The notes: generated from the sequence alone by a model not told the origin. Shown: positions 1,852 to 58,000, counted from the stretch's first letter. The stretch: 64,000 nt of DNA from Macrostomum lignano (GCA_002269645.1 NIVC01002353.1:62001-126000), one strand, 5' to 3'. Numbers and translations are program-made.

Positions 1852-1869
1852 ATCCTGCTTGCGACGCCA
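1852..1869 (-). other. Primer binding site of element A, overlapping the gag start codon
   Basis: TGGCGTCGCAAGCAGGAT lies 1 nt after the LTR end. Its reverse complement ATCCTGCTTGCGACG-CCA looks like a tRNA 3' end (Ser-like). Confidence 0.65.
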
Positions 1870-1870
1870 T

Positions 1871-3850: not shown

Positions 3851-3852
3851 TT

Positions 3853-4678: not shown

Positions 4679-13906
<9,228 letters not shown>

Positions 13907-19000: not shown

Positions 19001-19400
19001 CCACCCACTTTGTCCTGTCCAAGCCTTACGGTGGCATTTTCAGGCTAACAAGCTGCGGTCTGCGCCGGCGCTCACTCGGCTGTTTTGCGTCCACATCGCC
19101 GGAAGCTGGTGCCCGTTTAAATCGCGTCAATTCGACCGCCGCCTCGCTCGGGCTCTGACAGATGCGGGTTGGGCGGCGACAGCTTTCTCGGGCCACTCTC
19201 TACGACGGGGTGGCGCCTGTCTGGCGTTCGACAGCGGCCTCGACGTGGAGCAGATCAAGCGGCTGGGCGGCTGGCGCAGCGGCGCCGTTTCACGTTACCT
19301 GCCGCAGTCGGGAGGGGGGGTTACTTCCGCCTCCTGCGCCCAATGGTCAACCGTGTGCTGCCGGCACCTCTCTAGCGCTCGCCTGACTCTCCCGTCGCCG
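16027..19400 (+). mobile_element. Tyrosine-recombinase retrotransposon (Ngaro/DIRS-like), degenerate: gag, RT/RNase H, YR
   Basis: Gag begins with a SAP/HeH-like motif at 16027 and has a Cys/His knuckle (CRVCLRSDH). RT: ISALGAIPKEDG..IHDCSRPEG..VND, KIDLKEAYR, YLDDF. RNase H: VYSDSSAAV, HVPG..LADPASR. YR: ALLRKAN, HSLRRGGA, LGGWRS..VSRY. Several stops and frameshifts; no methyltransferase or terminal repeats recognised. Confidence 0.88.
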
Positions 19401-19499
19401 TGTACCCTACTTTTTAATCCCTTTGTTCGGGTTTTTGGGATGTTTTTCTCGTGCTCTTCAATCGTTGCCTTTGCTCTCTCCCTCCGGCCGTTCCGCTAA
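18430..19499 (+). CDS. Tyrosine recombinase of the Ngaro/DIRS-like element
   Basis: Contains AWAPSPRASYASNLKQWQRFC and the R-H-R-W-Y catalytic signature. The C-terminus is probably frameshifted at the G-run near 19315. Confidence 0.88.
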
Positions 19500-31409: not shown

Positions 31410-31419
31410 CAGTCACAGG

Positions 31420-31590
<171 letters not shown>

Positions 31591-31805
31591 CCTTGAAACT
31601 CTTCGAAAGCATTCACCCCCATTGGCGGGAGGTAGGGAGGCATGGAACCTCAGTGAGAAATGGTTTCCTCAAAGATTTTATCCGAGCGCAATAGAAATGC
31701 CAGCCAGCCATTTGCTGAGACATCGCTGCCACCGTAGTGCTTTTCTGGGAGTTAATGGAGAAATGAATGTGACCGTTTTATTAGATCAGCAAAAGGGCCT
31801 GTCAA

Positions 31806-36585: not shown

Positions 36586-38229
36586 TCAAATTTCTGAGCC
36601 GGCCGTCCCGTCTTCATCAGCTTCATCGGCGGTGTCGGCAGGCGGTCGCCTCAGCGGCAGGCCGTCGGTGCTGTTGACGGCGGCGCCGGCAGCCGCAGCG
36701 GGGAGCCGCAGCAGCTGCAGGAAGGCGAGCTCCACCAGCTCGAAGGCCACGGTGAGGGTGACGCCCAGCGTGAGGCTGCCGACGCCGCCCAGCCGGCTGA
36801 GCAGGGCGCTCAGGGTGATGACCGGCTGCTCGCTGTGCTCCAGCGTCATGTAGGTCGCCCTGGCAACCGTCACCAAAGCCAAGTCGTCGGCTGGCAGGCC
36901 GACCTCGGCCTCTTCTTCCAGTTCGACGTAGTCGAGCGGACGCTGGCCTGTCCGCTGGCGCCGCAGCTGCGCCATCTGGGTGGCGCCGGGGCGCCAGCCG
37001 CAGTTGGACTGCTCAACCAAGTAGCGCCAGTGCACGCAGCGCCTGCGGCATGGTTGGCCCAGCTGCCCGCTAGCCTCATCCTCGCCGTCAGAGCCGGAGC
37101 GCTGCTCGCTGTACACTCGGTCCAGGCTGATGTTTCTGGCACAGGCGGTCCTGGCGAGGAGGCCGTCAGGACCTTCAAGATCTAGCCGGCTGCAGTAGGG
37201 CAGCAGCTGCAGGTCCAGCGGGCGGGGGTTGAGGTGGAAGGCGGAGGTGCAGTTGCAGTGGTGCGCGATGAAGCTGCTGATGCTCTGGGCGATGCAGGCA
37301 TCGTAGGTGTAGTTGAAGACGGTCTCGCCGGCCTGGCTGATGCGGGGCGCGGCGGGCAGCTCGGCGGCCTCGATGCAGTCGGTTTTGGGACTGCGGTACT
37401 TGATGAAGCGCTCGGGCCGGTAGCGGATGGTGCTGGCGGTGCCCGGCTGCACATTGTACTGCTCGTAGTCGATGTTGGGGAAGGTGCCGGGCTCGTGCAG
37501 CACGATGGCCAGCCCCACGGCCTCGTGGAATAGGTTGTAGGCCTGCTGCGGGCCGAGATCCGCCGACGGGCTGGCGTTGAAGCCGCCGGCCGCCATCACC
37601 ATGGAGACGCTGCTGACGTAGGCAGGGTCCTCGCTGACCTGCAGCTCGTAGCAGTTGAAGTAGAGCGGGTGCAGGATGCGGCGGACGCGGAAGCGGCACT
37701 CCTCCTCGTGCGCCACGGACGGGTTGGTGTTGCGGCTGTGGCGCATCACGCAGAGCAGCAGCAGGTCGCCGAACCGGTGGCCGAGCTGGCGGACCTCGGT
37801 CGGCCGCAGGTTCTGGAAGTAAGAGGACACCCGGTCGTTCTGGAACAGATCGGCTGCGTCCGCGGCGCGCCCGCTGGCAGCGAGGCTGTCGACGGCGTCG
37901 CGCAGCCGGCGGGAGAAGTCGATCGGGCTGGGGACGCGGCCGCTGGCCCAGAGCTGCGCGGCGCGGGGCGAGAAGGGCTGGTGGGAGCAGACAGTGATGC
38001 TGGGGAACAGAGACGGGTCGTTGGCCAGCTGGTCCGTCTGCAGGCTGACGTGGTACTCGAAGTACTCGCTGACCAGATAGTAGGAGTTGACGCCGAGTAG
38101 GCAGAGCATGCTGAGCACGAAGCCGGCCCACAGCAGCCTCAGGAAGGGGTGCTGGTCCGGCCGCACCAGCCGGCCAAAGCCGCGGAGGCTGGTGCCGCTG
38201 GCAAACTGGCGCAGGCAGCTGGTTGCCAT
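36586..38229 (-). CDS. Intronless DEG/ENaC (amiloride-sensitive sodium channel family) subunit, 547 aa
   Basis: FASGTSLRG pre-TM1, TM1 (LLWAGFVLSMLCLLG), FPSITVC, YFNCY, GLAIVLHEPG, Cys-rich thumb (YTYDAC..CNC..C..C...C), TM2 (LLSRLGGVGSLTLGVTLTVAFELVE). Confidence 0.9.
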   Translation of the reverse strand: MATSCLRQFASGTSLRGFGRLVRPDQHPFLRLLWAGFVLSMLCLLGVNSYYLVSEYFEYHVSLQTDQLANDPSLFPSITVCSHQPFSPRAAQLWASGRVPSPIDFSRRLRDAVDSLAASGRAADAADLFQNDRVSSYFQNLRPTEVRQLGHRFGDLLLLCVMRHSRNTNPSVAHEEECRFRVRRILHPLYFNCYELQVSEDPAYVSSVSMVMAAGGFNASPSADLGPQQAYNLFHEAVGLAIVLHEPGTFPNIDYEQYNVQPGTASTIRYRPERFIKYRSPKTDCIEAAELPAAPRISQAGETVFNYTYDACIAQSISSFIAHHCNCTSAFHLNPRPLDLQLLPYCSRLDLEGPDGLLARTACARNISLDRVYSEQRSGSDGEDEASGQLGQPCRRRCVHWRYLVEQSNCGWRPGATQMAQLRRQRTGQRPLDYVELEEEAEVGLPADDLALVTVARATYMTLEHSEQPVITLSALLSRLGGVGSLTLGVTLTVAFELVELAFLQLLRLPAAAAGAAVNSTDGLPLRRPPADTADEADEDGTAGSEI

Positions 38230-38584: not shown

Positions 38585-39085
38585 CGTGCAGTCTGTGCCA
38601 AGTCAATGGGTCAGTGAGGGACTGGGTCAGTGAGGGACTGGGTCAGTGAGGGACTGGGTCAGCGAGGGAATGGGTCAGTGAAGGAATGGGTCAGTGAGGG
38701 GATGGGTCAGTGAGGAGCTGGGTCAGTCAGGGAATGGGTCAGTGAGGGACTGGGTCAGTCAGGGACTGGGTTAGTGAGAGAATGGGTCAGTGAGGGACTG
38801 GGTCGTCAGTGAGGGGATGGGTCAGTGAGGGAATGGGTCAGTGAGGGGATGGGTCAGTGAAGGAATGGGTCAGTGAGGGGATGGGTCAGTGAGGGGATGG
38901 GTCAGTGAGGGAATGGGTCAGTGAGGGGATGGGTCAGTGAGGGGATGGGTCGGTGAGGGAATGGGTCAGTGAGGGAATGGGTCAGTGAGGGAATGAGTCA
39001 GTGTGGGACTGGGTCAGTGAGAGAATGGGTCAGTGAGGGACTAAGTCAGTGAGGGACTGAGTCGTCAGTGAGGGGGTGAGGCACT
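38585..39085. repeat. 16-bp minisatellite (gggtcagtgaggga[a/c]t)
   Basis: Directly visible. Confidence 0.95.
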
Positions 39086-39302
39086 GAGGGAATTGGTAAG
39101 TAGGGGATTAATTGCTAACAGACAACTCAGAATCCACAGCAAAAGTTGGTCAATCACCAAGTTCACCATATGTACCCCGTTGAAGCGCAACAAGCAAAAA
39201 TTGGAATTTTAAAGTTTCCAATCAGAACTTCATCATCCGCTGACTTTGCCAATCAGAGTAATTTTGCCCCGCGGATAACGAACTGCGCACAGCCGGCCAC
39301 CA

Positions 39303-39775
39303 CGGACAGATCAAACAGACGGACAGATCAAACAGACGGACAGATCAAACAGGCGGACAGATCAAACAGACGGACAGATCAACCAGACGGACAGATCAAA
39401 CAGGCGGACAGATCAAACAGGCGGACAGATCAAACAGGCGGACAGATCAAACAGACGGACAGATCAAACAGACGGACATATCAAACAGACGGACATATCA
39501 AACAGACGGACAGATCAAACAGACGGACAGATCAAACAGACGGACAGATCAAACAGGCGGACAGATCAAACAGACGGACAGATCAAACAGACGGACAGAT
39601 CAAACAGGCGGACAGATCAACCAGACGGACAGATCAAACAGGCGGACAGATCAAACAGGCGGACAGATCAAACAGACGGACAGATCAAACAGGCGGACAG
39701 ATCAACCAGACGGACAGATCAAACAGACGGACAGATCAAACAGATGGACAGATCAAACAGACGGACAGATCAAAA
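39303..39775. repeat. 17-bp minisatellite (cggacagatcaaacaga)
   Basis: Directly visible. Confidence 0.95.
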
Positions 39776-40012
39776 CGCCGACACAGTTTATCCATCAGGT
39801 CCGCAGCCACTGGTTAAACAGGCTGACCATGCCCCGCTGCTCAGTATGCTTGTGTCGTTAAGGAAAAGGGTAAATAATTGTTGGATTTGATGCATCAACT
39901 ACTGAGGAACTCCGGCTTATCAGTAGTCAGTTGCATAATAATTTGGCGATAGCTGGTTAATAATATCAGCTTCTTGATAAGTGATTTGAAAATTCAACAC
40001 AAAATAAACCAT

Positions 40013-40278
40013 TACTGACCCACCGCTGACCCAATTTCTCCTACTGACCCACCGCTGACCCAATTTCTCCTACTGACCCACCGCTGACCAATTTCTCCTA
40101 CTGACCCACTGCTGACCCAATCTCCTACTGACCCACTGCTGATCCAATTTCTCCTACTGACCCACAGCTGACCAATTTCTCCTACTGACCCACTGCTGAC
40201 CCAATCTCCTACTGACCCTACTGCTGATCCAATTTCTCCTACTGACCCACAGCTGACCAATTTCTCCTACTGACCCAC
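40013..40278. repeat. ~28-29-bp minisatellite (ctgacccaatttctcctactgacccacc)
   Basis: Directly visible. Confidence 0.93.
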
Positions 40279-40794
40279 CAATGTCTTCCTGCTGAGCTCA
40301 AAGCAAAGGAAGCAAGCCAGAGGAGCCGGTGGCAGTTTGCGGTGCCGATGGCCAGAATCGCAAATGAAGCAGAGGAGTATTGATAATTCATTGAGGCCTG
40401 ACAGATCAGCTCAGGCCGAGCCTACAGGCCCAGAAAACTGATCGCGTAATGGAAATCAGAACAATATCGAACACGGAGCATCGCATTTGTGACTCATCTG
40501 GAATCGAATCGAAAAAGATAAAAACTGTGGCTAGCAACGGCGAGAACTGCTAACCGACAGGGCGCATCGGATTGGTAATGGAGGCAGGAGTAAAGTGCCA
40601 TCAGGCGACAAAGACCTATAAACTCGTCCTTGTATTGTAGGATTACCGTATAAAGCCGGGGAATCACAGAGACACGCGTGGAATTCGCAAATATGCGAAT
40701 CCAATTTGTTGAAGAGCAATGCTGCATTTTGGCATTGAAGAGGCAAATTTCAGAGCAAAAGTTATAAAAGAGCTGTAAGTAGTTAGGGGAAAAG

Positions 40795-42745
40795 GGGCTG
40801 TGAGTCATGATGGGAAGGGAGCTGTGAGTCATGATGGGAAGGGAGCTGTGAGTCATGATGGGAAGGGAGCTGTGAGTCATGATGGGAAGGGAGCTGTGAG
40901 TCATGATGGGAAGGGAGCTGTGAGTCATGATGGGAAGGGAGCTGTGAGTCATGATGGGAAGGGAGCTGTGAGTCATGATGGGAAGGGAGCTGTGAGTCAT
41001 GATGGGAAGGGAGCTGTGAGTCATGATGGGAAGGGAGCTGTGAGTCATGATGGGAAGGGAGCTGTGAGTCATGATGGGAAGGGAGCTGTGAGTCATGATG
41101 GGAAGGGAGCTGTGAGTCATGATGGGAAGGGAGCTGTGAGTCATGATGGGAAGGGAGCTGTGAGTCATGATGGGAAGGGAGCTGTGAGTCATGATGGGAA
41201 GGGAGCTGTGAGTCATGATGGGAAGGGAGCTGTGAGTCATGATGGGAAGGGAGCTGTGAGTCATGATGGGAAGGGAGCTGTGAGTCATGATGGGAAGGGA
41301 GCTGTGAATTATTATGGGAAGGGAGCTGTGAGTCATGATGGGAAGGGAGCTGTGAGTCATGATGGGAAGGGAGCTGAGTCATGATGGGAAGGGAGCTGTG
41401 AGTCATGATGGGAAGGGAGCTGTGAGTCATGATGGGAAGGGAGCTGTGAGTCATGATGGGAAGGGAGCTGTGAGTCATGATGAGAAGGGAGCTGTGAGTC
41501 ATGATGGGAAGGGAGCTGTGAGTCATGATGGGAAGGGAGCTGTGAATTATTATGGGAAGGGAGCTGTGAGTCATGATGGGAAGGGAGCTGTGAGTCATGA
41601 TGGGAAGGGAGCTGTGAGTCATGATGGGAAGGGAGCTGTGAGTCATGATGGGAAGGGAGCTGTGAGTCATGATGGGAAGGGAGCTGTGAGTCATGATGGG
41701 AAGGGAGCTGTGAGTCATGATGGGAAGGGAGCTGTGAATTATTATGGGAAGGGAGCTGTGAGTCATGATGGGAAGGGAGCTGAGTCATGATGGGAAGGGA
41801 GCTGTGAGTCATGATGGGAAGGGAGCTGTGAGTCATGATGGGAAGGGAGCTGTGAGTCATGATGGGAAGGGAGCTGTGAGTCATGATGGGAAGGGAGCTG
41901 TGAATTATTATGGGAAGGGAGCTGTGAGTCATGCTCGGATAAGAGCTGTGAGTCATGATGGGAAGGGAGCTGTGAGTCATGATGGGAAGGGAGCTGTGAG
42001 TCATGATGGGAAGGGAGCTGTGAGTCATGATGGGAAGGGAGCTGTGAGTCATGATGGGAAGGGAGCTGTGAGTCATGTTGGGAAGGGAGCTGTGAGTCAT
42101 GATGGGAAGGGAGCTGTGAGTCATGATGGGAAGGGAGCTGTGAATTATTATGGGAAGGGAGCTGTGAGTCATGCTCGGATAAGAGCTGTGAGTCATGATG
42201 GGAAGGGAGCTGTGAGTCATGATGGGAAGGGAGCTGTGAGTCATGATGGGAAGGGAGCTGTGAATTATTATGGGAAGGGAGCTGTGAATCATGATGGGAA
42301 GGGAGCTGTGAGTCATGATGGGAAGGGAGCTGTGAGTCATGATGGGAAGGGAGCTGTGAGTCATGATGGGAAGGGAGCTGTGAGTCATGATGGGAAGGGA
42401 GCTGTGAGTCATGATGGGAAGGGAGCTGTGAATCATGATGGGAAGGGAGCTGTGAGTCATGATGGGAAGGGAGCTGTGAATCATGATGGGAAGGGAGCTG
42501 TGAATCATGATGGGAAGGGAGCTGTGAGTCATGATGGGAAGGGAGCTGTGAGTCATGATGGGAAGGGAGCTGTGAATCATGATGGGAAGGGAGCTGTGAA
42601 TCATGATGGGAAGGGAGCTGTGAATCATGATGGGAAGGGAGCTGTGAGTCATGATGGGAAGGGAGCTGTGAGTCATGATGGGAAGGGAGCTGTGAGTCAT
42701 GATGGGAAGGGAGCTGTGAATCGACATGATTGGCGGGTAGCTGAG
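40795..42745. repeat. 24-bp minisatellite (~80 copies; gtgagtcatgatgggaagggagct)
   Basis: Directly visible. Variant units recur in higher-order blocks, for example at 41881 and 42121, 240 bp apart. Confidence 0.98.
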
Positions 42746-43096
42746 TCATATTGGATCATGTCATAGGTCATCGGTCATATTAGATTATACGTCATACTTA
42801 GCAGCAGGTGGAAATGCTGGAAATCAGAGAGCATCTTCCAAGAGATAATAAAAGTGTCAGGTCAGGTGCAAGAACTTTCAATTTCAAAATTAATGAGAAA
42901 AATAAAAGTAAAATTCAACCCAGTGGAGCAATTACTGGGGTAAAATTTCGGATGCATATATATTAAGAAAAATTAAAAAAATCTAATAACCCACACAGAT
43001 AAACCTCTGTGATGGTTTTCAACCACGAAAAAAATTGCCTAAAAATTATGCCATTTATAATTTCTTCAGGTCAAGATTTTCTTCAACCCTTAAGCT

Positions 43097-43460
43097 TTTT
43101 ATTAGAGGCAGGGGGGGGGGTTGTGTGCACCCTGGCGCACTTTAAGCGACATAGGCACACAACCGGCGAGAGGCATTACTGCCCATTCCGCCGACTCCCC
43201 TGAGCAGGCATACAAGCGCGCGGATACGTACGCAGGCACACACTCACACAGGAGTGTACAGCGGCCCTAACTTTATATTATCGTTAGGCATGTACACTTC
43301 ACTGCGCCTTGGGGGGTTGGCTCTCAAGGCTGTTAATTGCACGAGCAGAGCCAAGCCGAGATTCCAATTCAGCCCCAAATTAATGTGACTGCACTTGGAA
43401 TCGAGCCTGGGTCGCTGGCACACCAGAGCAGCTGCGCTACCGCTGGGCTACGGCCCCCCT
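43097..43460 (-). mobile_element. tRNA-derived SINE with a 12-bp TSD
   Basis: Head GGGGGCCGTAGCCCAGCGGTAG...GGCTCGATTCC (A- and B-box-like), tail AATAAAAA, TSD AACCCTTAAGCT at 43085-43096 and 43461-43472. Confidence 0.82.
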
Positions 43461-43513
43461 AACCCTTAAGCTAGTTTTGATTCCTTTGCTCACTTTTATT
43501 CTGCCCATCTTAG

Positions 43514-44215
43514 GTGTTACAGGGGTCTATGGCAAGTCAGGTGTTACAGGGGTCCATGGCCAGACAGGTGTTACAGGAGTCTATGGTCAGTCAGGTGTTA
43601 CAGGGGTCCATGGCCAGTCAGGTGTTACAGGGGTCCATGGTCAGTCAGGTACTACAGGGGTCCATGGCCAGTCAGGTGTTACAGGGGTCCATGGCCAGTC
43701 AGGTATTACAGGGGTCCATGGCCAGTCAGGTGTTACAGGGGTCCATGGCCAGTCAGGTGTTACAGGGGTCCATGGCCAGTCAGGTGTCACAGGGGTCCAT
43801 GGCCAGTCAGGTGTTACAGGGGTCCATGGCCAGTCAGGTGTTACAGGGGTCCATGGCCAGTCAGGTGTTACAGGGGTCCATGGCCAGTCAGGTATTACAG
43901 GGGTCCATGGCCAGTCAGGTGTTACAGGGGTCCATGGCCAGTCAGGTGTTAGAGGGGTCCATGGCCAGTCAGGTGTTAGAGGGGTCCATGGCCAGTCAGG
44001 TGTTACAGGGATCCATGGTCAGTCAGGTACTACAGGGGTCCATGGCCAGTCAGGTGTTAGAGGGGTCCATGGCCAGTCAGGTGTTACAGGGATCCATGGC
44101 CAGTCAGGTGTTAGAGGGGTCCATGGCCAGTCAGGTGTTACAGGGGTCCATGGCCAGTCAGGTGTTAGAGGGGTCCATGGCCAGTCAGGTGTTACAGGGA
44201 TCCACGCAAGTCAGA
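43514..44215 (+). repeat. 27-bp minisatellite that translates as (GVT-GVH-GQS)n
   Basis: Unit ggtgttacaggggtccatggccagtca, ~26 copies. Confidence 0.95.
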
Positions 44216-44277
44216 TGTTACAGAAGTCCACGGCAAGTCAAGGACTGCAGTGGTCCATGTAGCAATGCAGCGGCCGG

Positions 44278-47200
44278 TTACTCGAACAGGCCGCGGGACG
44301 GGATGTTCTTGAACTCCTGGTCGGTGAGCACCCGGACGCCGTACTCGCCGTCGCAGTCAGCCAGGCCGTGGATCTCCAATGCCTTGGGGCCCTTGGTCAG
44401 GCGGGCCAGGTAGGTGACAATGGCCAGGTTGATGACCTGTCCGGGCACCACCACTGGGATGCCGGGCGGGTAGGAGACGATCTGGTCGCAGCAGACGCGG
44501 TCAAGCAGTGCCTGGTTTGGGCGGCCGTCGTCATCCAGCAGTAGGAGCCGCTCGCCGCTCTCGTAGAAGGCGAGGCGGGGCAGGCAGGCGAGGCGGCTGA
44601 AGCGGGGGATCTCCGTGATGCGGTAGTAGCTGCGGGGCGGCCGCCGGTCCTTGGCCAGCCGGAGCATCGCGTCGAACAGGCGGGACACCTGGCGGGGTAG
44701 GGAATGGGATGCGGGATTTTTGAGGTGGGATCGGAGACCGGATTGTATAAGTGGGATGGGGAATGCCGGATGGGGAAGGAAGGATGCTGGATAGAGAATG
44801 CTGGATGGGGAGTGTTGGATGGGGAATGCGGGATGGGGAATGTCAGATGGGGAATGTCGGATGGGAAATGCTGGATGGGGGATGGATGCTGGATAGGGAA
44901 TGCTGGATGGGGAATGCTGGATGGGGAATGCTGGATGGGGAATGCGGGATGGGGAATGCTGGATGGGGAATGCGGGATGGGGAATGCGGGATGGGGAATG
45001 CTGGATGGGGAATGTGGGATGGGGAATGTCGGATGGGGAATGTCGGATGGGAAATGCTGGATGGGGGATGGATGCTGGATAGGGAATGCTGGATGGGGAA
45101 TGCTGGATGGGGAATGCGGGATGGGGAATGCTGGATGGGGAATGCGGGATGGGGAATGCGGGATGGGGAATGCCGGATGGGGAATGGCGGACGAGGAATG
45201 TGGGGTAAAAAATATGGGATGGGGAATGGATGAGTCAACGGCAGAGCCAACGAGAGCATAGATGAGCGAGCGAACCTTGCTGCCGGTGGTGCCCATGCTG
45301 AGCAGCAGGGTGATGGTATTGAAAGTCCGCTTCTCGCCTTGGATGTTGAACCTCTCGAACAGGATCTGCTGCAGCTCCTGCGCGCTGTAGCCGGACTTGG
45401 AGATGTCCACAGTGAGCTTGGTGGGGTCCAGACGGATGCCATCCTGCTGCAGCTCCTCGGGCAGCAGGTCCTCCAGCTCCAGCACGCGGAACACCCCCGT
45501 GGAGTTGATCTTCTGGCGGAGCTCGCCAGACAGCTTCACCGTGCGGTCCAGCAGCCGGTAGCCTTCCATCACTGCCTGTGGGTGCGGGGGAGTGGATGCG
45601 ATTCATGGCTGAGAATCTGTGAATTAGGGGCAGGGTGACTGGTGATTTACAGGTGAGGATTTGTGAATTAGGATCTGGGTAGCTGGTAATTCACGGATGA
45701 CAATCTGTGAATTAGGGGCTGGGTAGCTGGCGATTAACAGGTGAGGATTTGTGAATTAGGATCTGGGTAGCTGGTGATTCACAGGTGAGGATTTGTGAAT
45801 TAGGGGCTGGGTAGCTGGTGATTCACAGGTGAGGATTTGTGAATTAGGGGCTGGGTAGCTGGTGATTCACAGGTGAGGATTTGTGAATTAGGATCTGGGT
45901 AGCTGGTGATTCACAGGTGAGGATTTGTGAATTAGGGGCTGGGTAGCTGGTGATTCACAGGTGAGGATTTGTGAATTAGGATCTGGGTAGCTGGTGATTC
46001 ACAGGTGAGGATTTGTGAATTAGGGGCTGGGTAGCTGGTGATTCACAGGTGAGGATTTGTGAATTAGGGGCTGGGTAGCTGGTGATTCACAGGTGAGGAT
46101 TTGTGAATTAGGGGCTGGGTAGCTGGTGATTCACAGGTGAGGATTTGTGAATTAGGATCTGGGTAGCTGGTGATTCACAGGTGAGGATTTGTGAATTAGG
46201 GGCTGGGTAGCTGGTGATTCACAGGTGAGGATTTGTGAATTAGGGGCTGGGTAGCTGGTGATTCACAGGTGAGGATTTGTGAATTAGGGGCTGGGTAGCT
46301 GGTGATTCACAGATGAGGATTTGTGCATTAGGATCTGGGCAGCTGGTAATTCACGGATGACAATCTGTGAATTAGGGGCTGGGTAGCTGGAGATTCACGA
46401 GAAAAAAACGATCTGTGAACGAGGAGACAGGTACAAATACAGCTCGGGGATAAATGGGGTCAGACAGGCGGAAGCGCACCTGTTTCCTGCCCACATCCAG
46501 GCTGGCAATGAGGCCGTACTGCGGACTGGTGCTGGCGTACATGTTGAAGTTCTCCCTGAACAGGTGCTCATCAAAGGCCGGGTCGTTAACGTGAACCATG
46601 CTGGCCTGGGAGAAGGCGGTAAGGGTCTTGTGACTGCTCTGGGTCACGTAGTCCGCACCGGCCTCCAGAGCGGTGGGCCGGAAGGCCGGGTGGAAGCGGG
46701 CGAAGGCGTACCAGGCCTCATCAATGATCACCTTGATGCCCGCGCTGCGGTGGGGAGGAGGTTGTTCTGTGAGCATCAGGAGCAGCCATAAAAGCAACCA
46801 GGATCGAAGCCTTAAAATCTCACCCCTAGAGTCGAAGCTTCAAAAACTCATCCGCTAGGATGAAAACCTCAAAATCTCACCCCAGTGATTGAAGTTCAAA
46901 ATCTCACCCCAGTGATGAAGTTCAAAACCTCACCCCAGTGATGAAGTTCAAAACCTCACCCCAGTGATGAAGTTCAAAATCTCACCCCAGTGGTTGAAGT
47001 TCGAAATCTCACCCCAGTGGTTAAAGTTCAAAATCTCACCCCAATGATTGAAGTTCAAAATCTCACTCCAATGATTGAAGTTCAAAATCTCACCCCAATG
47101 ATTGAAGTTCAAAATCTCACCCCAGTGACTGAAGTTCAAAATCTCACCCCAATGATTGAAGTTCAAAATCTCACTCCAATGATTGAAGTTCAAAATCTCA

Positions 47201-49693
47201 CCCCAATGATTGAAGTTCAAAATCTCACCCCAGTGACTGAAGTTCAAAATCTCACCCCAGTGATGAAGTTCAAAATCTCACCCCAATGATTGAAGTTCAA
47301 AATCTCACCCCAATGATTGAAGTTCAAAATCTCACCCCCTCCCCTATGGTCGCGACCTAAATTTGAGACCGAGGACAGGCACAATGACCCCCACCTGTGC
47401 GCCGCCTCCACAATGGGCTTGAGGTCGTAGAGCAGGCCATCGTAGGTGCAGTTGGTCAGGATGATGGCCTTGGCGTCGGGATTGGCCTTGATGGCCTCAT
47501 AGATGGCCCGCTTGGGCACGGGGCCGAAGATGCCGAACTGCGGCCTGGCGGAGCAGTCCATGTACACCGGGCGGCAGTCGGACAGGATCACGCCGTAGTG
47601 CACGGACTTGTGGCAGTTGCGGTCCAGCAGCAGCTTGTCGCCGGGGGCCAGCAGGGTCTGGAAGATCACCTTGTTGGTGGTGGAGGCTCCGTTGGTGGCA
47701 AAGTAGGTCTTGCGGGCGCCGAAGGCCTTGGCAGCCAGAGACTGGGCGGCCGCGATGACGCCCTTGGGGTGCATGAGGGAGTCGAGCATGGGCACGGACA
47801 CGGACAGGTCGGCCCGCAGCATGTGCTCGCCAACAAAGTCGTAGAAGTCGCCAACCCAGGGCGAGTTGCGCAGCGAGTCGCCGCCGGAGTGGCCGGGCGT
47901 GTGCCAGGAGTCCTTGGCCATCTTCACGTACGTCTTCAGCGCGTCGTAGAACGGCGTGGCGGACTTTTCGGCCAGCTCGGCGGACAGGATGCGGAACCAG
48001 CCGCTGTAGTCGGACTCGTCCCGGTTGAAGTAGCCGTCAACGGCGTGGCTGACCAGCTCCTCCAGCAGGGCGCGCTCGTCGTCCCCGCCGCTCAGCACAA
48101 CGTAGAGCGACAACTCCGGCCGGAGCTCGTTCAGCCGGTTCGCCAGAGTGATGGCCGCCTGGTTCACCTCCGCGGAGGTCAGGTGCCTGGGTGGGGTGGG
48201 GTGGGTGATGTAAGGTGCCTGGATTAGGTGGGTGGACCCACAGGACCCCGCACCCACAGGACCTGCTGCCCGACCTGATGTCAGGTGCCAGGATGGGGTG
48301 GGTGATGTCAGGTGCCTAGATGGGGCGGGTGGGTGATGTCAGGTGCCAGGATGGGGTGGGTGATGTCAGGTGCCTAGATGGGGTGGGTGTGTGATGTCAG
48401 GTGCCAGGATGGGGTGGGTGGTGTCAGGTGCCTGGATTGGGTGGGTGGGCGGTGTCAGGTGCCTGGATTGGAGGTCAGGTGCCTGGACTAGGTAGATGGG
48501 TGATGTCAGGTGCCTGGATTAGGTAGATGGGTGATGTCAGGTGCCTGGATTAGGTGGGTGGGTGATGTCAGGTGCCTGGATTGGGTGGGTGGGTGGTGTC
48601 AGGTGCCCAGCCGAAGTGAAGGAGGACGAGTTAATTGTCCCCATTTAAGACTATAAAGTTAAACAGATATATGAACGGGAGCGGGCGAATGTGTTGATGG
48701 GCCTGCGGCAAGATGCATCAGTTATAAATGCAGTTTTATCGCCTACTTCGTCTAGAAACCCTGACGATACCTTGACACCCTGACGACCCTCTATGAGACT
48801 CTGACGACACTATAAGACCCTGACGACACTCTATGAGACCTTGACGACACCATAAGATCCTGACGATCCTCTAGAAACCCTGACGACACTTTATGAGACC
48901 CTGAAGACACTTTATGAGACCCTGACGACACTATAAGACCCTGACGACACTATAAGACCCTGACGACACTCAAGAGACCCTGACGACACCATAAGACCCT
49001 GACGATCCTCTAGAAACCCTGACGACACTTTATGAGACCCTGAAGACACTCTATGAGACCCTGATGACACTCTATGAGACCCTGAAGACACTCTATGAGA
49101 CCCTGAAGACACTCTATGAGACCCTGACGACACTTTATGAGACTCTAACGACACTTTATGAGACCGACGACACTCTGAGACCCTGACGACACTCTGAGAC
49201 CCTGACGACACTCTGAGACCCTGACGAAACTCTATGAGACCCTGACGACACTTTATGAGACTCTGACGACACTCTATGAGATCCCGACGACATACTAGGA
49301 GCCCCTGACGACCCACTAGTAGCCCGACGGCCCACTAGAAGCCCCGACGTCAGTAAAACGCCCAAAAGATTCAGGAATGGTTTCTGTTATCTTTTTGTAT
49401 TTCACTAAAGTGATTCATGCCGATATGTAGCGTAGAAAGAATAACAAAGCAAAGAAATTCACTGCATACAGCGCCTCCGCTAGCACAGACCTGTCGATGA
49501 CGACAATCTGGACTTCACCATCGGCCGAGACGCAGTCTATGGCCTCCTTGAAGGCGCTCACCGCGGTGAACACCATGCCGAACGGATTGTCCAGGCGGGC
49601 GCCCGCCAACTTCAGGCCGGCCAGGGCGGCTCCCAGCCAGGCGGAGTCGCAGCTGACTAGGAGGATGCGGCTGACCGGAGGCGGGGTGGACAT
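44278..49693 (-). CDS. Bacterial-type PLP-dependent Orn/Lys/Arg decarboxylase (fold type I) with an N-terminal receiver-like wing domain; 5 exons, 656 aa
   Basis: Exons (minus): 49693-49491, 48186-47395, 46744-46480, 45575-45276, 44688-44278. Lengths 203+792+265+300+411=1971 nt; GT-AG introns with phases 2,2,0,0. Motifs: WHTPGHSGG, AFGARKTYFATNGASTTNK, DRNCHKSVH, TNCTYDG, DEAW, TQSSHK (PLP lysine), STSPQY, DPTKLT, YPPGIPVVVPG. Confidence 0.92.
44700..49330. repeat. Intronic minisatellites of the decarboxylase gene: 14-bp (44700-45230), 44-bp (45620-46400), 27-bp (46860-47340), ~29-bp (48190-48610), ~21-bp (48760-49330)
   Basis: Each array lies wholly within a predicted intron. Confidence 0.95.
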
Positions 49694-50211
49694 CGCTGGA
49701 TGGCTAATCGGTGCTGCTGCGGCTGGCGAGGGCGGGCGACTCACGAGCGACTTTGGACTGAAAGAAAATCAGTTTTTTTCCGGACGGGTTTGTCATTCTT
49801 AACGGCGACGCGATTTACATTGCCCCTGTGCTTGCGTCCCTTGAACTCAATGGATCAAGGGAGCCTTGGCCATAGACAGCTGCGCGCGTTGCGCAGATAC
49901 AAGCGTACTTTAACAACACATTCAGCAGTTTGGCAACCGAAATAGAAGGAAAAAATGAGGAAAGTTTCGAAAAAAACATAGATTTTCCGGGATTTTCCGG
50001 GATATTGTTTGCGTTCTCCGGGATACTATTTAGTATTATTCAATAATATCCCGTAAAATCTTTATGTGCATGTCTTATGTAAATGCGATTAAGCATGCCT
50101 TTTCGGGAGCTATTTTCACAAATCCCTCGGGCCTTTCTCGAGCTCCCTCAAAAGCCATGTTTAATCTTCTACATATTCCTCACTCTCTCCCGATAAGCGA
50201 TCGCCCTGAGG

Positions 50212-50600: not shown

Positions 50601-51024
50601 TGGTCATTTAGGCAAGCTTTTGCTGTTCGGTAGTTGGGTAAAGTCGCAATGTCTATGGCCAAAGCTCGCTTACCCCATCGAGGTTCAGAGAGGCAACTAA
50701 GGAAGTAATCCCGTTTCAAATGTAATTACGTTTTCAAATACTACTCAGAAAAAGTAGGCAGATAGAGATGTCCTGCACTGCAAAGCCTAGCAAACTTGTG
50801 ACAAGTGGAACAAATTGGGAAAGAAAGAAACGGCGGAGCCATTTATCAACTTCATTAATAAACAATTGGAATAACTGGAAGCCTTCGCGGACAGTTCAGT
50901 GTATTTATCGAACTTCTCATTTGAAGAGCGTCTAAAAAAAGTTTTTTTTCATAAAAACGGTACAAAAAAGGTCAATAAACCATAAACGGCAGCTGTAACA
51001 GTATCAGTATAAAGTGAGAAAAGC

Positions 51025-52105
51025 ACTCATGTACACAGGTGGAATGTAGAGGGCTGCAGACTCACTCATGCACACAGGTGGAATGTAGAGGGCTGCAGAC
51101 TCACTCATGCACACAGGTGGAATGTAGAAAGCTGCAGACTCACTCATGCACACAGGTGGAATGTAGAGGGCTGCAGACTCACTCATGCACACAGGTGGAA
51201 AGAGGGCTGCAGACTCACTCATGCACACAGGTGGAATTTAGAGGGCTGCAGACTCACTCATGCACACAGGTGGAATTTAGAGGGCTGCAGACTCACTCAT
51301 GCACACAGGTGGAATTTAGAGGGCTGCAGACTCACTCATGCACACAGGTGGAATTTAGAGGGCTGCAGACTCACTCATGCACACAGGTGGAATTTAGAGG
51401 GCTGCAGACTCACTCATGCACACAGGTGGAATTTAGAGGGCTGCAGACTCACTCATGCACACAGGTGGAATTTAGAGGGCTGCAGACTCACTCATGCACA
51501 CAGGTGGAATGTAGAGGGCTGCAGACTCACTCATGCACACAGGTGGAATTAGAGGGCTGCAGACTCACTCATGCACACAGGTGGAATTTAGAGGGCTGCA
51601 GACTCACTCATGCACACAGGTGGAATTAGAGGGCTGCAGACTCACTCATGCACACAGGTGGAATTTAGAGGGCTGCAGACTCACTCATGCACACAGGTGG
51701 AATTAGAGGGCTGCAGACTCACTCATGCACACAGGTGGAATTTAGAGGGCTGCAGACTCACTCATGCACACAGGTGGAATTTAGAGGGCTGCAGATTCAC
51801 TCATGCACACAGGTGGAATTTAGAGGGCTGCAGACTCACTCATGCACACAGGTGGAATTTAGAGGGCTGCAGACTCACTCATGCACACAGGTGGAATTTA
51901 GAGGGCTGCAGACTCACTCATGCACACAGGTGGAATTTAGAGGGCTGCAGACTCACTCATGCACACAGGTGGAATTTAGAGGGCTGCAGACTCACTCATG
52001 CACACAGGTGGAATTTAGAGGGCTGCAGACTCACTCATGCACACAGGTGGAATTTAGAGGGCTGCAGACTCACTCATGCACACAGGTGGAATGTAGAGGG
52101 CCGCA
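51025..52105. repeat. 39-bp minisatellite (~28 copies)
   Basis: Unit gcacacaggtggaatttagagggctgcagactcactcat. Confidence 0.98.
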
Positions 52106-52779
52106 GACTCCTGTAGAAAGCAGATAATAATAATTACAGGGCACTTATGATATAACAAAAATGAAAAATATAAAATTTAACAAAGCCAAAAATTTATAGC
52201 AAGCATCACAGATTCTGTGCACGCTTGTAAAAACACGCTGCCTCAAGAAGACAGGCGCAAAGGGCAAAAGTACATACTCATATCGACTGTATAAAAAATT
52301 ACTCAATATAATTTTGGCAAGGTGAGTGAAAGATTAACGATAGGACTTGAATGAAAATGTGCTGTTGAGTATAATGTAAATAAGCCAGTGCGAAATACTC
52401 ATGTTGCCCTAACAGACCTGTGTACTGCTATTGGGCATATAACGTGATAGTATAAAATGGCTACAAATATATATATAAAAAACAGATAAAAACAAGCCAA
52501 TTCAATATGAGTCAAAAGGCGCTCGCATTTGTCTTGAGCAGCTCAAGCCTAAAATGCAAAAGTGATGGGAGGAGCGTAAAATCAATTTCAGTTGCATTGA
52601 CGCATCGATAGGTCAAGTGGGTGCGGCGCGTTGGGGAGCTTTAGCGGGTTAAGGTCAAGATTTAGGAATTGAGGGCCACTTGATAAGGAATTGGGGTGCT
52701 GTGATGGGGAATTCAAGGGGTGCTGTGATGGGGAATTTGGGATGCTGTGATGAAGAATTGGGGTGCTGGGAATTGGCTC

Positions 52780-55053: not shown

Positions 55054-58000
55054 TTAGTCTGAGCTGGCAAAGTCGGCAGATTGGCCCGCGCTGCCGCCGC
55101 TGCAATTAAAATGCAGTGCATTATGAGTTATAATATTTGAGACACTTAAGACGGCTGGCTGCCAGCAGACAGAGCAGCCGACCTTTGCTAACTGCGTTGT
55201 AAAATATTTTTGGCAACGGTAGACAGTCATGTGATACCTCAGATCCGACAGTGTGAAGGCCATAAAACTGGATTAACAATAGAATCTTCTAGAATAGCAT
55301 GAGCAAATGTTACTGAAGCCTAAGACCGCATGAAACCGATAAAAGCGGATCATGGGTCGACTAGCGTTATTGCGGCGGAGCCGTCGTCATATCAGCGCCA
55401 AAATGGCTGGATAGAAATTTCTCGCCAGATAACGCCAGATTGTCATGAAAATTTAAGAAAATCGGCGTTATAGTGACGTCAAAATGGCGGAACGCCGGAA
55501 TAGCGCCTCCGCCAGTTAAGCGCCACCTACCGGCGTTAAGTCTGTCAATACCGTGGTAAAAGTGGATCAGCTTAAGCCGAAATAACGCCAGGCGTTATGA
55601 ACACGTTTTTATCGGGAAACTTTGCAATAAAAAGGATGAACTTGAATTGGATGGAACGCAAGCTCACAGTTGCAACTGTTGCTGGCCGAATTGGTGCCGA
55701 GACTGCGTCATGGATGACATCGCAGTGCTGCTGTTGTGCTCCACTGACTGCGTCATGGACGACACTGCAGTTCTGTTAACTTGTTGTACAGACTTTGACT
55801 GTGCCACAGACGACACCGTAGTGCTGTTGGTTTGCTGTGCCGACTGCGACTGCAATTGAGCAATGCAACTACTGTCAGGTACTGTCAGGTATAAGCTAGC
55901 CACAAAGATCCACCAATTTCACAGCATTTTGCACTCCCTGCCCTAAGCGCCACTGGTTATTAGGTTCGAGTGAAAATGCAGTTGAAACTGGCATCCACCA
56001 CTATACAGTAGCATGCAATACTAAACATAACTTTAGTGTGCAGACAGACCGCACCAGCGGGCAAGCGCTTTTTAACATTCCATATTTAGGCTATTTCTAC
56101 AGTACAGCAGGGCATGCAACAGAGAGCAATAAAACCTGCTACACGAGTAGGCGGTTAGGGAGACAGAGCAGCCTATAATAGCAGAGGAGCCTCCCTGCTA
56201 CCGAAAATAGAAACGCGTGCGCGTTGCCGCGTGCGAGCAAGCCAGCTACTTTTGGCCTGTCGCGTCTGGCTTCGCTTCGAATACGAATTGCGAATATCAG
56301 AGGCGCAAGCGTTGCGACTGAACACTTTTGTATAAGGAATTCTCGGCTAGATTTTTTTTCGCAATTTACTCAAGGGGCTGCAAAGAGCGATAGAGAACGA
56401 GAAGACTCTTTCGTTCTCACGCGCGAAGCCTCTTGTTTTTTACTGCTTCTGAATTGCTACTAGTACACAAGCGAAGAAGATTGTGGTAAGGGGTAAACAA
56501 CTTACAAAAGAGCTCTGCGATTGTAACATGGAGTTCTGGACGCGGTTACCGCTATCGAGCGCCATTCCATCAAGTCTGAAAAATAATTTAACTTGTTTAT
56601 AAAGACTGCAAAATTGGTATATGATCGTACAGCAAGTCGATAAAATACGCATGCACTCACCTAGAATCTTCTTCTATAGGTTGCGGCGTTTCATATCCTT
56701 GAGTACCGGATGGGAAAACGCTGCTTACTTGCTGTTGAAAGGCAGAAGTGTGGGCACCGGAAGAAGAATTTGAAAAAGTAGAGTGCGGAGGAACTTGTCT
56801 ACTCAAAATATGTCTGCTGGCTATCGTGCGACTCGTCGTGACTGTGCCATCATCACTCGTGAATTGAAATTCCTGGTTCGAACTCTCCTCTTGGCCCTGC
56901 CAGCCAGAATCTGTTCTAGCCGTAATAGAGGAAAGCTGAGCGGAATCTTTTATGCTAGAACCACTGTCGGGACTGCTAAGTCGATCTCCATCTCCATCAA
57001 ACGTTGATCTCTCTAAAGAATCTGATGTACTATTGGTTGTATAATCCGTTTCGTAGCGTCGCTTCACAACAGACGAATCAAAACGCGAGCCAGAAGAGTA
57101 GGTGCGCATAGAAGTAGTGTCTTTGCGGTCAATAAAGTGATCAGAAGCTTTTAGGATTCCATGCTCTCTATTAAGCTCGTCAACATCTGAGCTGATGCCA
57201 GGGGGTTCTGGCGAAGCATCCATGCAAACTTGAAGACCAACACTTTTAACGTCTCTCTTAAGAAGTTCGGTAATTATGTTCACCATCTCAGCAGCGCTAA
57301 TACCATACGATTGGCGCAGACTCTGGAAAAACATCAGTCTTTGGCTCGACACGGTTGAAATACTGGTTGAGTTTGATGAGAAATTGTTTCTTTGATATTC
57401 ATTTGATTCAGCTGACCTTGAAACAAGTTCTCGATCCTTGGGAGGCTCAGCATTAGGAACTGATTTTACTGCGGTACGAGTTTGCTTTCTGCCATCCTCA
57501 AATGATACATTCACACCAACTGACCGCTGCGCCGGTTTGGCCTCTTCAATAAAAATATTAATCGCCACATCTCTGCAAGGTGGCTTCACCATTAGGCCAA
57601 CCGTTCTGCGGTGAACAGGTGCTGAACTTGGCTGCGATTCACGAATCCGGATAGTCTCCTGAACGAATGTTCGGCTTTCTAGCTCACTGACGACAGATTT
57701 AAGACGCGCAATCTCGCTTAAGTATTGCTCTTTCTCAGAAATATCCATTAATTCACGAGTCACTCGCTCCTTGACTTTTCTGACACCTTGCTGTGTTCCG
57801 TGCTAGTCTTGTAAATTTCTGTCGTGTTCACTGTTGTATCGCCCTCTTTTTTACTTTTTTCAGGGCATAATGCACTACGATTATCCTCATCAATAGGCAA
57901 GTCATTCTGTACATCAGTGCAAGCATCAATATGCTCGGGTGTATCGATTGGCTGAGTGCTGAATACAGAGTCTACTAACGGATTAAGGATCGCATCTGTC

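What the first reader, a model, noticed from the sequence alone, without database searches (positions are those of the whole stretch)
44278..49693. Bacterial-type Orn/Lys/Arg decarboxylase with four spliceosomal introns
Seen in sequence: a complete 656-aa frame with intact PLP-site motifs (DEAW, QSSHK) and an N-terminal receiver-like wing domain. Established knowledge: this fold-type-I family (AdiA/CadA/SpeC/Ldc) is prokaryotic in most lineages, whereas animals use the unrelated fold-type-III ornithine decarboxylase. Inference: a domesticated horizontal transfer that could provide agmatine, cadaverine or antizyme-independent putrescine synthesis, or acid resistance. The substrate cannot be called from the sequence by eye.
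Basis: partly seen in the sequence, partly recalled or inferred. Interest (0 to 1): 0.75.

Follow-up and report, generated by a model that had tools for sequence, protein, structure and literature searches.

The report
Bacterial decarboxylase gene domesticated in flatworm
A flatworm genome carries an intact amino-acid decarboxylase gene acquired from betaproteobacteria; it has since gained four introns and been kept by selection, a clear animal case of gene capture, though its substrate is still unknown.

Summary
Five minus-strand exons (49693-44278), separated by four GT..AG introns, splice into a 656-aa PF01276/PF03711 decarboxylase (E 1.9e-101). It has the PLP lysine (K371), the DEAW and CHK motifs, and a predicted receiver-like N-terminal wing.

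It is a horizontal transfer. The closest relatives are about 652-aa proteins of Chromobacteriaceae-like betaproteobacteria (73-77% protein identity; exons 2-5 are 76-84% DNA identical). The only eukaryotic relative found is Macrostomum lignano BOX15_Mlig029890 (76%). The window and M. lignano proteins are sisters (100/100 bootstraps; quartet sites 16:1:3), nested among bacteria.

The surroundings are animal genome: an ENaC channel whose only database hit is M. lignano, retrotransposons and minisatellites. No other donor gene survives.

The gene is under purifying selection (dN/dS 0.27 between species, 0.19 between M. lignano copies). None of the seven introns (four here, three in M. lignano) shares a position, so all are lineage-specific gains.

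The substrate is unresolved. The closest solved structure, Rv2531c, is a glutamate decarboxylase. This protein instead has the basic-amino-acid residues at its two alignable determinant positions, and donor genes sit next to argF-argG. Ornithine or arginine is my best guess. Acid resistance is unlikely.

Verdict: a new member of a known kind.

The parts
49491..49693 (-). Exon 1 (203 nt; M1 to the first two bases of codon 68). It encodes beta1-beta3 of the wing domain, including the invariant D67. The ATG at 49693 is the first ATG after an in-frame stop.
48187..49490 (-). Intron 1 (1304 nt, phase 2, GT..CAG). About 69% is minisatellite. The 3' ~420 nt carries 12 extra copies of the acceptor junction plus the first 9 nt of exon 2 (decoy acceptors).
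47395..48186 (-). Exon 2 (792 nt). It encodes the rest of the wing, the linker and the first half of the PLP domain, including CHKS (H260-K261). It is 82% DNA identical to the bacterial gene on L001.
46745..47394 (-). Intron 2 (650 nt, phase 2, GT..CAG). About 72% is a 27-bp minisatellite.
46480..46744 (-). Exon 3 (265 nt). It contains DEAW (D340), the PLP lysine K371 in QSSHK, and S380 in AFSQAS. It is 95% protein and 84% DNA identical to bacterial P0002.
45576..46479 (-). Intron 3 (904 nt, phase 0, GT..CAG). About 87% is a 44-bp minisatellite.
45276..45575 (-). Exon 4 (300 nt). It contains the QGEK segment with E501.
44689..45275 (-). Intron 4 (587 nt, phase 0, GT..CAG). About 69% is a 14-bp C-rich minisatellite. 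By eye, the acceptor tract resembles a degenerate copy of the repeat unit (not tested).
44278..44688 (-). Exon 5 (411 nt including the TAA stop). It encodes the C-terminal domain (PF03711) with the YPPGIP motif.
43495..44277 (-). Probable 3' UTR. It contains a 27-bp x 27 minisatellite (43512-44240), followed by the first AATAAA, which starts at window position 43500 on the minus strand.
   Evidence: inferred; no transcript data

Best explanation
This is a functional animal gene of bacterial origin. A single intronless gene for a wing-containing, PLP-dependent, AAT-fold (fold-type I) amino-acid decarboxylase was transferred from a Chromobacteriaceae-like betaproteobacterium. The recipient was an ancestor shared by this macrostomid-related flatworm and Macrostomum lignano. 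After the two lineages split, the gene gained spliceosomal introns independently in each (four here, three in M. lignano, none at a shared position). These introns later filled with the C-rich minisatellites typical of these genomes. Purifying selection has kept the reading frame and every catalytic residue.

Inferred mechanism: the spliced mRNA encodes a 656-aa enzyme with no N-terminal extension that would suggest targeting. It should form the K371-PLP internal aldimine and alpha-decarboxylate an amino acid with a cationic side chain. My ranking is ornithine to putrescine (about 0.35), arginine to agmatine (about 0.25), lysine to cadaverine (about 0.15), and another substrate (about 0.25). 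If the substrate is ornithine, the worm gains a polyamine-precursor route outside the control of the canonical fold-type-III ODC and antizyme.

Shown here: gene structure, bacterial ancestry, host integration, selection, and non-shared introns. Inferred: expression in this species, substrate, and physiological role.
For: Structure and family.
Bacterial ancestry: the best hits are 652-aa Chromobacterium, Aquitalea, Gulbenkiania and Vogesella proteins at 71-74%, and an unnamed bacterial pair, P0002/P0003, at 76-77%. P0002 lies on an ordinary bacterial contig: dnaB, flagellin, helicase, DUF3579, the decarboxylase, argF, argG. Exons 2-5 are 76-84% DNA identical to that gene.
One clade: in the NJ tree the window and M. 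lignano are sisters in 100/100 bootstraps, and their sister is P0002/P0003 in 97/100. They share 8 derived residues found in at most 1 of 118 bacterial sequences. The shared stem is 0.059, against terminal branches of 0.13-0.15. Quartet site patterns are 16:1:3.
Host integration: an ENaC exon whose only hit among 5.8 billion proteins is M. lignano; retrotransposon, ankyrin and ECH exons; minisatellites throughout. The M. lignano copies lie on contigs of 197-369 kb, next to a 1524-aa ankyrin gene.
Selection: differences between the animal copies concentrate at columns that also vary among bacteria (chi2 = 109, p = 2e-23), and about 92% of near-invariant columns are retained. dN/dS is 0.27 between species and 0.19 between M. 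lignano paralogues.
Introns: positions and phases are. None is shared.
Expression of the orthologue: the GenBank models of Mlig_3_7 derive from an RNA-seq transcriptome assembly (PMC5730564).
Substrate class: S380 sits where Rv2531c has R576, and E501 where it has N731, as in LdcA and ODC (determinants from PMC13506015). The decarboxylase-argF-argG linkage holds in the 8 betaproteobacterial loci where argF was detected.
Against: There are no transcript data for this species. A search with the N-terminal 143 aa found no identical fragments. The three pairwise distances (window, M. lignano, P0002) are nearly equal at both synonymous and non-synonymous sites. There is no shared intron and no detectable synteny. 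Two transfers from one unsampled donor lineage therefore cannot be formally excluded. On substrate: the best PDB match by score is a glutamate decarboxylase. The local alignments around E501 to LdcA and ODC are weak (domain scores 2-5 bits). NCBIfam scores are far below every Lys, Arg or Orn equivalog cut-off. No member of the donor clade was found to be characterised. The tree is NJ only, not maximum likelihood.
Confidence: 0.82

Rival explanations
1. There were two independent transfers, one into each flatworm lineage, from the same or closely related unsampled bacteria (for example a habitual associate of macrostomids). The shared derived residues would then be donor features.
For: No intron position is shared among the seven. 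No synteny is detectable between the M. lignano flanks and the window. Pairwise dN and dS are star-like: 0.173/0.175/0.175 and 0.63/0.63/0.70.
Against: Five of the shared derived residues lie at positions conserved in at least 95% of the other 116 bacterial sequences and also in P0002. The shared stem branch is substantial at 0.059. Synteny loss is expected given the divergence, since the nearest ENaC homologue is only 38% identical. One event is more parsimonious than two.
Confidence: 0.12
2. The enzyme does not act on a basic amino acid. It could be a glutamate decarboxylase like Rv2531c, or it could act on some other substrate.
For: Rv2531c is the best-scoring solved structure (270 bits, against 235 for LdcA; Foldseek rank 1). 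PMC13506015 shows that annotation by similarity fails in this superfamily. NCBIfam scores are far below all equivalog cut-offs.
Against: The protein lacks the extra N-terminal domain of Rv2531c (656 aa against 947 aa). It has Ser where R576 pairs with the gamma-carboxylate, a gap at R718, and Glu where N731 lies. The AFSQAS motif is identical to LdcA and LdcI. The donor genes are linked to argF-argG.
Confidence: 0.2
3. The gene is a decaying or unexpressed relic in this species. The 'introns' would then be just repeat insertions into a dead gene.
For: There is no transcript evidence for this species. Intron 1 carries 12 decoy acceptors that could disturb splicing.
Against: All four insertions have exact GT..AG ends, and removing them restores a frame collinear with the bacterial homologues and free of stops over 1971 nt (sequences). 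Window-lineage substitutions avoid conserved columns (12/345 against 18/198, p = 0.01). dN/dS is 0.27. The orthologue has transcript-based models.
Confidence: 0.05
4. The gene is bacterial contamination or an assembly chimera.
For: Exons 2-5 are 76-84% DNA identical to a bacterial gene.
Against: Bacterial genes have no spliceosomal introns. The gene is split by four GT..AG introns made of the same kind of minisatellites that fill the rest of the window. No other bacterial gene is present in the window. Independent M. lignano contigs also carry an intron-bearing copy.
Confidence: 0.01

Closest known systems
About 652-aa OKR_DC_1 proteins of Chromobacteriaceae-like betaproteobacteria (Chromobacterium, Aquitalea, Gulbenkiania, Vogesella; unnamed P0002/P0003). 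They are annotated inconsistently as ornithine or arginine decarboxylase and are uncharacterised as far as I could find.
   Same: Same length and architecture (wing, PLP domain, C-terminal domain). 71-77% protein identity and 76-84% DNA identity over exons 2-5. The alignment is collinear across all exon junctions, and all catalytic motifs are present.
   Different: The bacterial genes are intronless and sit between helicase/DUF3579 and argF-argG. The window gene has four introns, lies in an animal genome, and has 8 animal-specific derived residues.
Macrostomum lignano BOX15_Mlig029890g1/g2/g3 (UniProt A0A1I8HZQ0, A0A267FGD5, A0A267EN67), annotated only as 'OKR_DC_1 domain-containing' or 'hypothetical' protein.
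   Same: It is the sister sequence (76% identity, 100/100 bootstrap). It is also intron-bearing and under purifying selection, and one of its introns is a C-rich minisatellite.
   Different: It has three introns at entirely different positions (after CDS nt 1002, 1464 and 1724). It has a roughly 37-aa C-terminal extension. It exists in three copies, and an ankyrin gene lies upstream.
Mycobacterium tuberculosis Rv2531c (PDB 9N0O/9N0N/9N0P), a 'cloaked' L-glutamate decarboxylase.
   Same: It is the best-scoring solved structure. It shares the receiver-like, PLP and C-terminal domains and the H-K motif (PMC13506015, PMC12329521).
   Different: Rv2531c has an extra N-terminal domain (947 aa). The window protein has S380, a gap, and E501 where Rv2531c has R576, R718 and N731.
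Wing-containing basic-amino-acid decarboxylases: P. aeruginosa LdcA (6Q6I), E. coli and H. alvei LdcI/LdcC, AdiA, and Lactobacillus ODC.
   Same: Same fold and domain order (TM about 0.6). The AFSQAS motif after the PLP lysine is identical. A Glu aligns with E501 in LdcA and ODC.
   Different: Only 20-26% identity in the Foldseek alignments. The window protein is about 50-100 residues shorter. NCBIfam scores are 189-241 bits against cut-offs of 794-1310 bits. Whether it forms decamers or has ppGpp/RavA-type regulation is not known.
Canonical animal ornithine decarboxylase (alanine-racemase fold, fold-type III, antizyme-regulated).
   Same: Possibly the same reaction (ornithine to putrescine). 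This is inference only.
   Different: The fold and ancestry are unrelated (established knowledge). Whether these worms also keep the canonical ODC was not tested here.

Membership tests
Pfam PF01276 OKR_DC_1 (AAT-fold Orn/Lys/Arg-type decarboxylases) | Profile match above the gathering score over the whole major domain | tested here: met
   340.3 bits against a cut-off of 27; residues 145-518 cover profile positions 1-415 of 417
Pfam PF01276 OKR_DC_1 | PLP-binding lysine, the His that stacks on PLP (H-K motif), and the Asp of the D-E-A-W segment | tested here: met
   K371 aligns with K570 of Rv2531c. H260-K261 aligns with H405-K406. D340 lies in DEAW. All are invariant across 40 homologues (residue roles from PMC13506015)
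Pfam PF01276 OKR_DC_1 | C-terminal domain PF03711 | tested here: met
   26.2 bits against a cut-off of 24.2. This is marginal and partial (residues 580-620). The YPPGIP motif aligns to all solved homologues
Wing-containing ('long', REC-domain) subgroup of AAT-fold decarboxylases | N-terminal receiver/flavodoxin-like domain | tested here: met
   The AF2 model has a (beta-alpha)5 fold at residues 8-122 with block pLDDT about 80-95. Foldseek alignments to LdcI, AdiA and Rv2531c are full length. The Pfam wing model PF03709 was not detected at E <= 0.01.
Characterised equivalogs LdcI/LdcC, AdiA, SpeC/SpeF (NCBIfam) | Score above the curated cut-off of the equivalog or subfamily model | tested here: not met
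   241 against 968 (LdcC), 218 against 1056 (CadA), 205 against 1167 (AdiA), 193 against 794 (ODC), 189 against 1310 (SpeF)
Rv2531c-type glutamate decarboxylases | Extra N-terminal domain, R576 pairing with the gamma-carboxylate, and R718 and N731 nearby | tested here: not met
   656 aa with no extra domain. S380, a gap, and E501 occupy the three positions
Horizontally acquired, domesticated gene in an animal | Nested within a bacterial clade, with no wider metazoan distribution | tested here: met
   The only eukaryotic relative recognised among the listed hits is M. lignano. Most unnamed hits were not checked individually.
Horizontally acquired, domesticated gene in an animal | Physical linkage to host genes and repeats; spliceosomal introns | tested here: met
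   for the window; for M. lignano
Horizontally acquired, domesticated gene in an animal | Purifying selection after transfer | tested here: met
   dN/dS 0.27 between species and 0.19 between M. lignano copies; site-class test p = 2e-23
Horizontally acquired, domesticated gene in an animal | Transcription and correct splicing in this species | not testable with these tools
   No transcript-derived fragments were found. There is only indirect support from the transcript-based models of the M. lignano orthologue.
Introner-like / transposon-derived introns | Introns similar in sequence to each other or to other copies in the genome | tested here: not met
   No intron-to-intron hits, and no hits elsewhere in the 64 kb. 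A genome-wide test was not possible.

The most novel reading that the evidence does not exclude
Because the gene arrived without introns, it acts as a clean recorder of intron gain. All seven introns in the two flatworm lineages were gained after the lineages split, and none is shared. Several of them consist almost entirely of C-rich minisatellites whose repeat unit itself supplies the polypyrimidine tract and the AG. In intron 1 the repeat even spans the intron/exon boundary. The most novel reading is that macrostomid genomes create introns at a high ongoing rate, through insertion or expansion of such minisatellites at MAG|G sites in coding DNA. That would be a mechanism of intron birth distinct from introner transposons.
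Probability: 0.2. Interest if true: 0.8.

Novelty: new member of a known kind. Interest (0 to 1): 0.6.

Why it matters
Functional bacterium-to-animal gene transfers are still few, and I found none reported for free-living flatworms in the searchable literature. This one has several useful properties:
- It is retained in at least two lineages and is under selection.
- It lies in a genus with transgenesis and RNAi (M. lignano), so its role in polyamine or amine metabolism can be tested directly.
- It belongs to an enzyme superfamily whose annotations were recently shown to be unreliable (PMC13506015). Characterising this uncharacterised ~650-aa clade would therefore inform thousands of bacterial annotations.
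- Because the gene arrived without introns, it gives a dated, unambiguous series of seven lineage-specific intron gains for studying how introns arise.

Tried and rejected
- Transcript support in the large protein database: a search with the divergent N-terminal 143 aa, which spans the exon 1/2 junction, returned only bacterial fragments.
The NCBI cluster members worked instead.
- Synteny between the M. lignano flanks (10 kb upstream and 10 kb downstream of the gene) and the window: only minisatellite-to-minisatellite noise.
- Remnants of the donor's neighbouring genes (helicase, DUF3579, argF, argG) in the window: none.
- GC3 as a signature of foreign origin: rejected, because the host ENaC exon has 0.90 against 0.91.
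- Introner hypothesis: the four introns share no similarity with each other or with the rest of the window.
- Exon-boundary duplication as the origin of the introns: seen only at the 3' end of intron 1, not in introns 2-4.
- Naming the donor from the genome collection: the scan's peptide patterns happened to include animal-specific residues, so it skipped Chromobacteriaceae and returned only relatives at 42-61% identity. Donor naming therefore rests.
- Fold comparison to call the substrate: all wing-containing decarboxylases match about equally well.
- Literature on Mlig029890, on Macrostomum HGT, or on characterisation of the Chromobacterium enzyme: nothing found.


Full report
1. OBSERVATION

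The region contains GC-rich coding blocks on the minus strand, separated by stretches of minisatellite. I enumerated all GT/AG boundary combinations near the block edges. Ten combinations give a stop-free spliced frame. This model is collinear at all four junctions with the 652-aa bacterial homologues (sequences, read by eye).

- All four introns start with GT and end in a C-rich tract plus CAG. Their phases are 2, 2, 0, 0, after codons 68, 332, 420 and 520. The exon junctions read CAG|G, CAG|C, CAG|G and AAG|G.
- tblastn with a bacterial homologue recovers five collinear blocks at the same edges, with E from 1.8e-14 to 3e-132.
- Left unspliced, the frame stops after 92 codons. The ATG at 49693 is the first one after an in-frame stop. 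The first AATAAA lies just beyond the 3' minisatellite.

2. WHAT THE PROTEIN IS

- Pfam gives PF01276 at E 1.9e-101 and PF03711 just above its cut-off.
- CHKS (259), DEAW (340), QSSHK (367, PLP lysine K371) and YPPGIP (593) are all present. They are invariant across a 40-sequence alignment.
- An AlphaFold2 model (mean pLDDT 74.9) shows a confident (beta-alpha)5 receiver-like fold at residues 8-122. The invariant D67 sits at the end of beta3.
- Foldseek gives full-length matches to Rv2531c, LdcI, LdcF, LdcC, AdiA, LdcA and ODC, all at TM about 0.6.

3. WHERE IT CAME FROM

Among 5.8 billion proteins, the best hit is a Macrostomum lignano protein (76% identity). Two unnamed 652-aa proteins follow at 76-77%, and then dozens of 652-aa proteins from Chromobacterium, Aquitalea, Gulbenkiania, Pseudogulbenkiania and Vogesella at 71-74%.

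- The unnamed P0002 lies on an ordinary bacterial contig: dnaB, flagellin, helicase, DUF3579, the decarboxylase, argF, argG. A second bacterial contig shows the same order.
- Exons 2-5 are still 76-84% DNA identical to that bacterial gene.
- In an NJ tree of 120 sequences, the window and M. lignano proteins are sisters in 100/100 bootstraps, and P0002/P0003 is their sister in 97/100. The group is nested in a Chromobacteriaceae-dominated clade.
- The two animal proteins share 8 derived residues found in at most 1 of 118 bacterial sequences.
- Quartet site patterns favour (window, M. lignano) by 16:1:3.
- The family is widespread in bacteria. The direction of transfer is therefore bacterium to animal.

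4. IS IT REALLY IN AN ANIMAL GENOME?

The window also holds:
- LTR-retrotransposon fragments, a reverse transcriptase, and a DIRS-like recombinase;
- an ankyrin ORF and an enoyl-CoA hydratase exon;
- a 547-aa DEG/ENaC channel ORF, whose only database hit is an M. lignano protein at 38% identity.

About 22% of the window is tandem repeat (my arithmetic from the coordinates). That matches the published character of Macrostomum genomes (PMC5730564). No other donor gene is present.

M. lignano carries three annotated copies on contigs of 197-369 kb, downstream of a 1524-aa ankyrin gene. Contamination is excluded.

The source organism is a macrostomid-related flatworm other than M. lignano. This is inferred from the absence of identical proteins and from the 38% ENaC match.

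5. IS IT MAINTAINED?

- Differences between the two animal proteins fall overwhelmingly at columns that also vary among bacteria (chi2 = 109, p = 2e-23).
- About 92% of near-invariant bacterial columns are retained in each animal copy.
- Lineage-specific changes avoid conserved columns (p = 0.01 and 0.008).
- Nei-Gojobori dN/dS is 0.27 between species. Between M. lignano copies g1 and g3 it is 0.19, from only 7 synonymous and 4 non-synonymous differences.
- The GenBank models of Mlig_3_7 derive from an RNA-seq transcriptome assembly. The orthologue is therefore transcribed and spliced as modelled.

Expression in this species itself remains untested.

6. INTRONS

I solved the M. lignano gene structures exactly. 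There are three introns, after CDS nt 1002 (phase 0), 1464 (phase 0) and 1724 (phase 2). Both copies examined have the same three.

- None coincides with the four window introns. The closest pair lies 13 nt apart, in different phases.
- The ancestor was bacterial, so all seven are gains, and all are lineage-specific.
- The window introns are 69-87% minisatellite (coordinates).
- M. lignano intron 3 is a 20-bp C-rich array of 29-36 copies. By eye, its acceptor tract matches the repeat unit.
- Window intron 1 contains 12 extra exact copies of the first 9 nt of exon 2, each preceded by a near-copy of the acceptor. A minisatellite has therefore expanded across the intron/exon boundary.
- The introns share no similarity with each other or with the rest of the window, so they are not obvious introners.
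- M. lignano introns 1 and 2 contain no tandem repeat. The arrays may therefore be secondary.

7. ONE TRANSFER OR TWO?

Monophyly, the shared derived residues at otherwise invariant sites, and a stem of 0.059 substitutions per site all favour one transfer before the split. Against that stand the lack of shared introns, the absence of synteny, and star-like distances. These leave about 0.12 for two transfers from one unsampled donor lineage.

8. FUNCTION

Similarity cannot assign a substrate. Scores against the LdcC, CadA, AdiA and ODC models are 189-241 bits, against cut-offs of 794-1310.

The best solved match, Rv2531c, was shown in 2026 to be a glutamate decarboxylase. Its determinants are R576, R718 and N731 (PMC13506015). 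At those positions the window protein has S380 (in AFSQAS, identical to LdcA and LdcI), a gap, and E501. LdcA (VVEK) and L. rhamnosus ODC (IVPEK) also align a Glu at that last position. The window protein also lacks Rv2531c's extra N-terminal domain.

In the donor clade, the gene is followed by argF-argG in the 8 betaproteobacterial loci where argF was detected. No such linkage appears in the distant phyla. No antiporter is adjacent to it.

I therefore favour a biosynthetic-type decarboxylase of a cationic amino acid: ornithine first, then arginine, then lysine. About 0.2-0.25 remains for another substrate. An acid-resistance role is unlikely. I found no characterised member of the clade.

9. 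COMPARISON AND NOVELTY

The kind of thing is well known: a bacterial metabolic gene captured by an animal, which then acquires introns and is kept by selection. The M. lignano sequence is already in public databases, but only as an uncharacterised protein. I found no paper that discusses it or any Macrostomum HGT.

This is a new member of a known kind. It has two points of added interest: an uncharacterised enzyme clade, and seven non-shared intron gains in minisatellite-rich introns.

Noticed in passing
window 48276-48607 (inside intron 1, minus strand): A 27-31-bp minisatellite whose unit contains the acceptor junction plus the first 9 nt of exon 2 (..CCAG|GCACCTGAC). The intron holds 12 exact extra copies of the exon-start 9-mer, which act as a row of decoy acceptors. 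The array must have expanded across the intron/exon boundary.
   Followed up: partly
L003 10001-13993 and L004 10001-13050 (M. lignano BOX15_Mlig029890g1 and g3): The paralogues are nearly identical in coding sequence (7 synonymous and 4 non-synonymous differences). Intron 2 is 995 nt in one copy and 194 nt in the other, an indel of about 800 bp with no tandem repeat. Intron 3 differs by about 7 copies of a 20-bp minisatellite. Minisatellites of 21 and 23 bp sit immediately upstream of the start codon.
   Followed up: partly
P0040 (UniParc UPI0007A2439E, 1129 aa): An older M. lignano gene model fuses the upstream ankyrin gene to the decarboxylase and reads through intron 2, with a frame shift. 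This is an annotation artefact, not a real fusion protein.
   Followed up: partly
window 36589-38229 (-): A 547-aa DEG/ENaC (PF00858) ORF that is uninterrupted across the whole Pfam domain. Its GC3 is 0.90. Its only hit among 5.8 billion proteins is an M. lignano protein at 38% identity, which suggests a fast-evolving, lineage-specific channel family.
   Followed up: partly
window 3-3887 (-), 29828-31612 (-), 18555-19499 (+): Mobile-element remains. Two adjacent ORFs carry gag-type aspartyl protease plus reverse transcriptase domains (LTR-retrotransposon fragments). A separate RT ORF begins with a long (SL)n run encoded by an (AG)82 repeat. A tyrosine-recombinase ('phage integrase') ORF suggests a DIRS- or Crypton-like element.
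   Followed up: partly
window 8377-9039 (-): An ORF with a partial enoyl-CoA hydratase/isomerase (PF00378) match. It is probably one exon of a host gene, flanked by G-rich and C-rich microsatellite and minisatellite arrays.
   Followed up: no
window 38605-44240 and 51024-52110: The decarboxylase gene is boxed in by long minisatellite arrays (units of 16, 17, 28, 24 x 80 and 27 x 27 bp on the 3' side, and 39 x 28 on the 5' side), with strong positive GC skew from 38 to 46 kb. About 22% of the whole window is tandem repeat, and 69-87% of each of the four introns.
   Followed up: partly
window 3853-4102: A 50-bp x 5 minisatellite whose unit contains two telomere-like CCCTAA repeats (CCTAACCCTAACCC).
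   Followed up: no
window 56657-60161 (-): Three consecutive long ORFs (368, 566 and 305 aa from the first start codon) on one strand. They have low GC3 (about 0.38), no Pfam match, and an internal 93-bp repeat. Their composition is very different from the GC3-rich ENaC and decarboxylase genes. They may be an unknown host gene or a mobile element.
   Followed up: no
window 49740-49755 (minus strand, about 50-60 nt upstream of the ATG): A pyrimidine tract followed by AG (GATTTTCTTTCAG). It could be a trans-splice or 5'-UTR intron acceptor. PMC5730564 reports that about 39% of M. lignano genes are trans-spliced.
   Followed up: no
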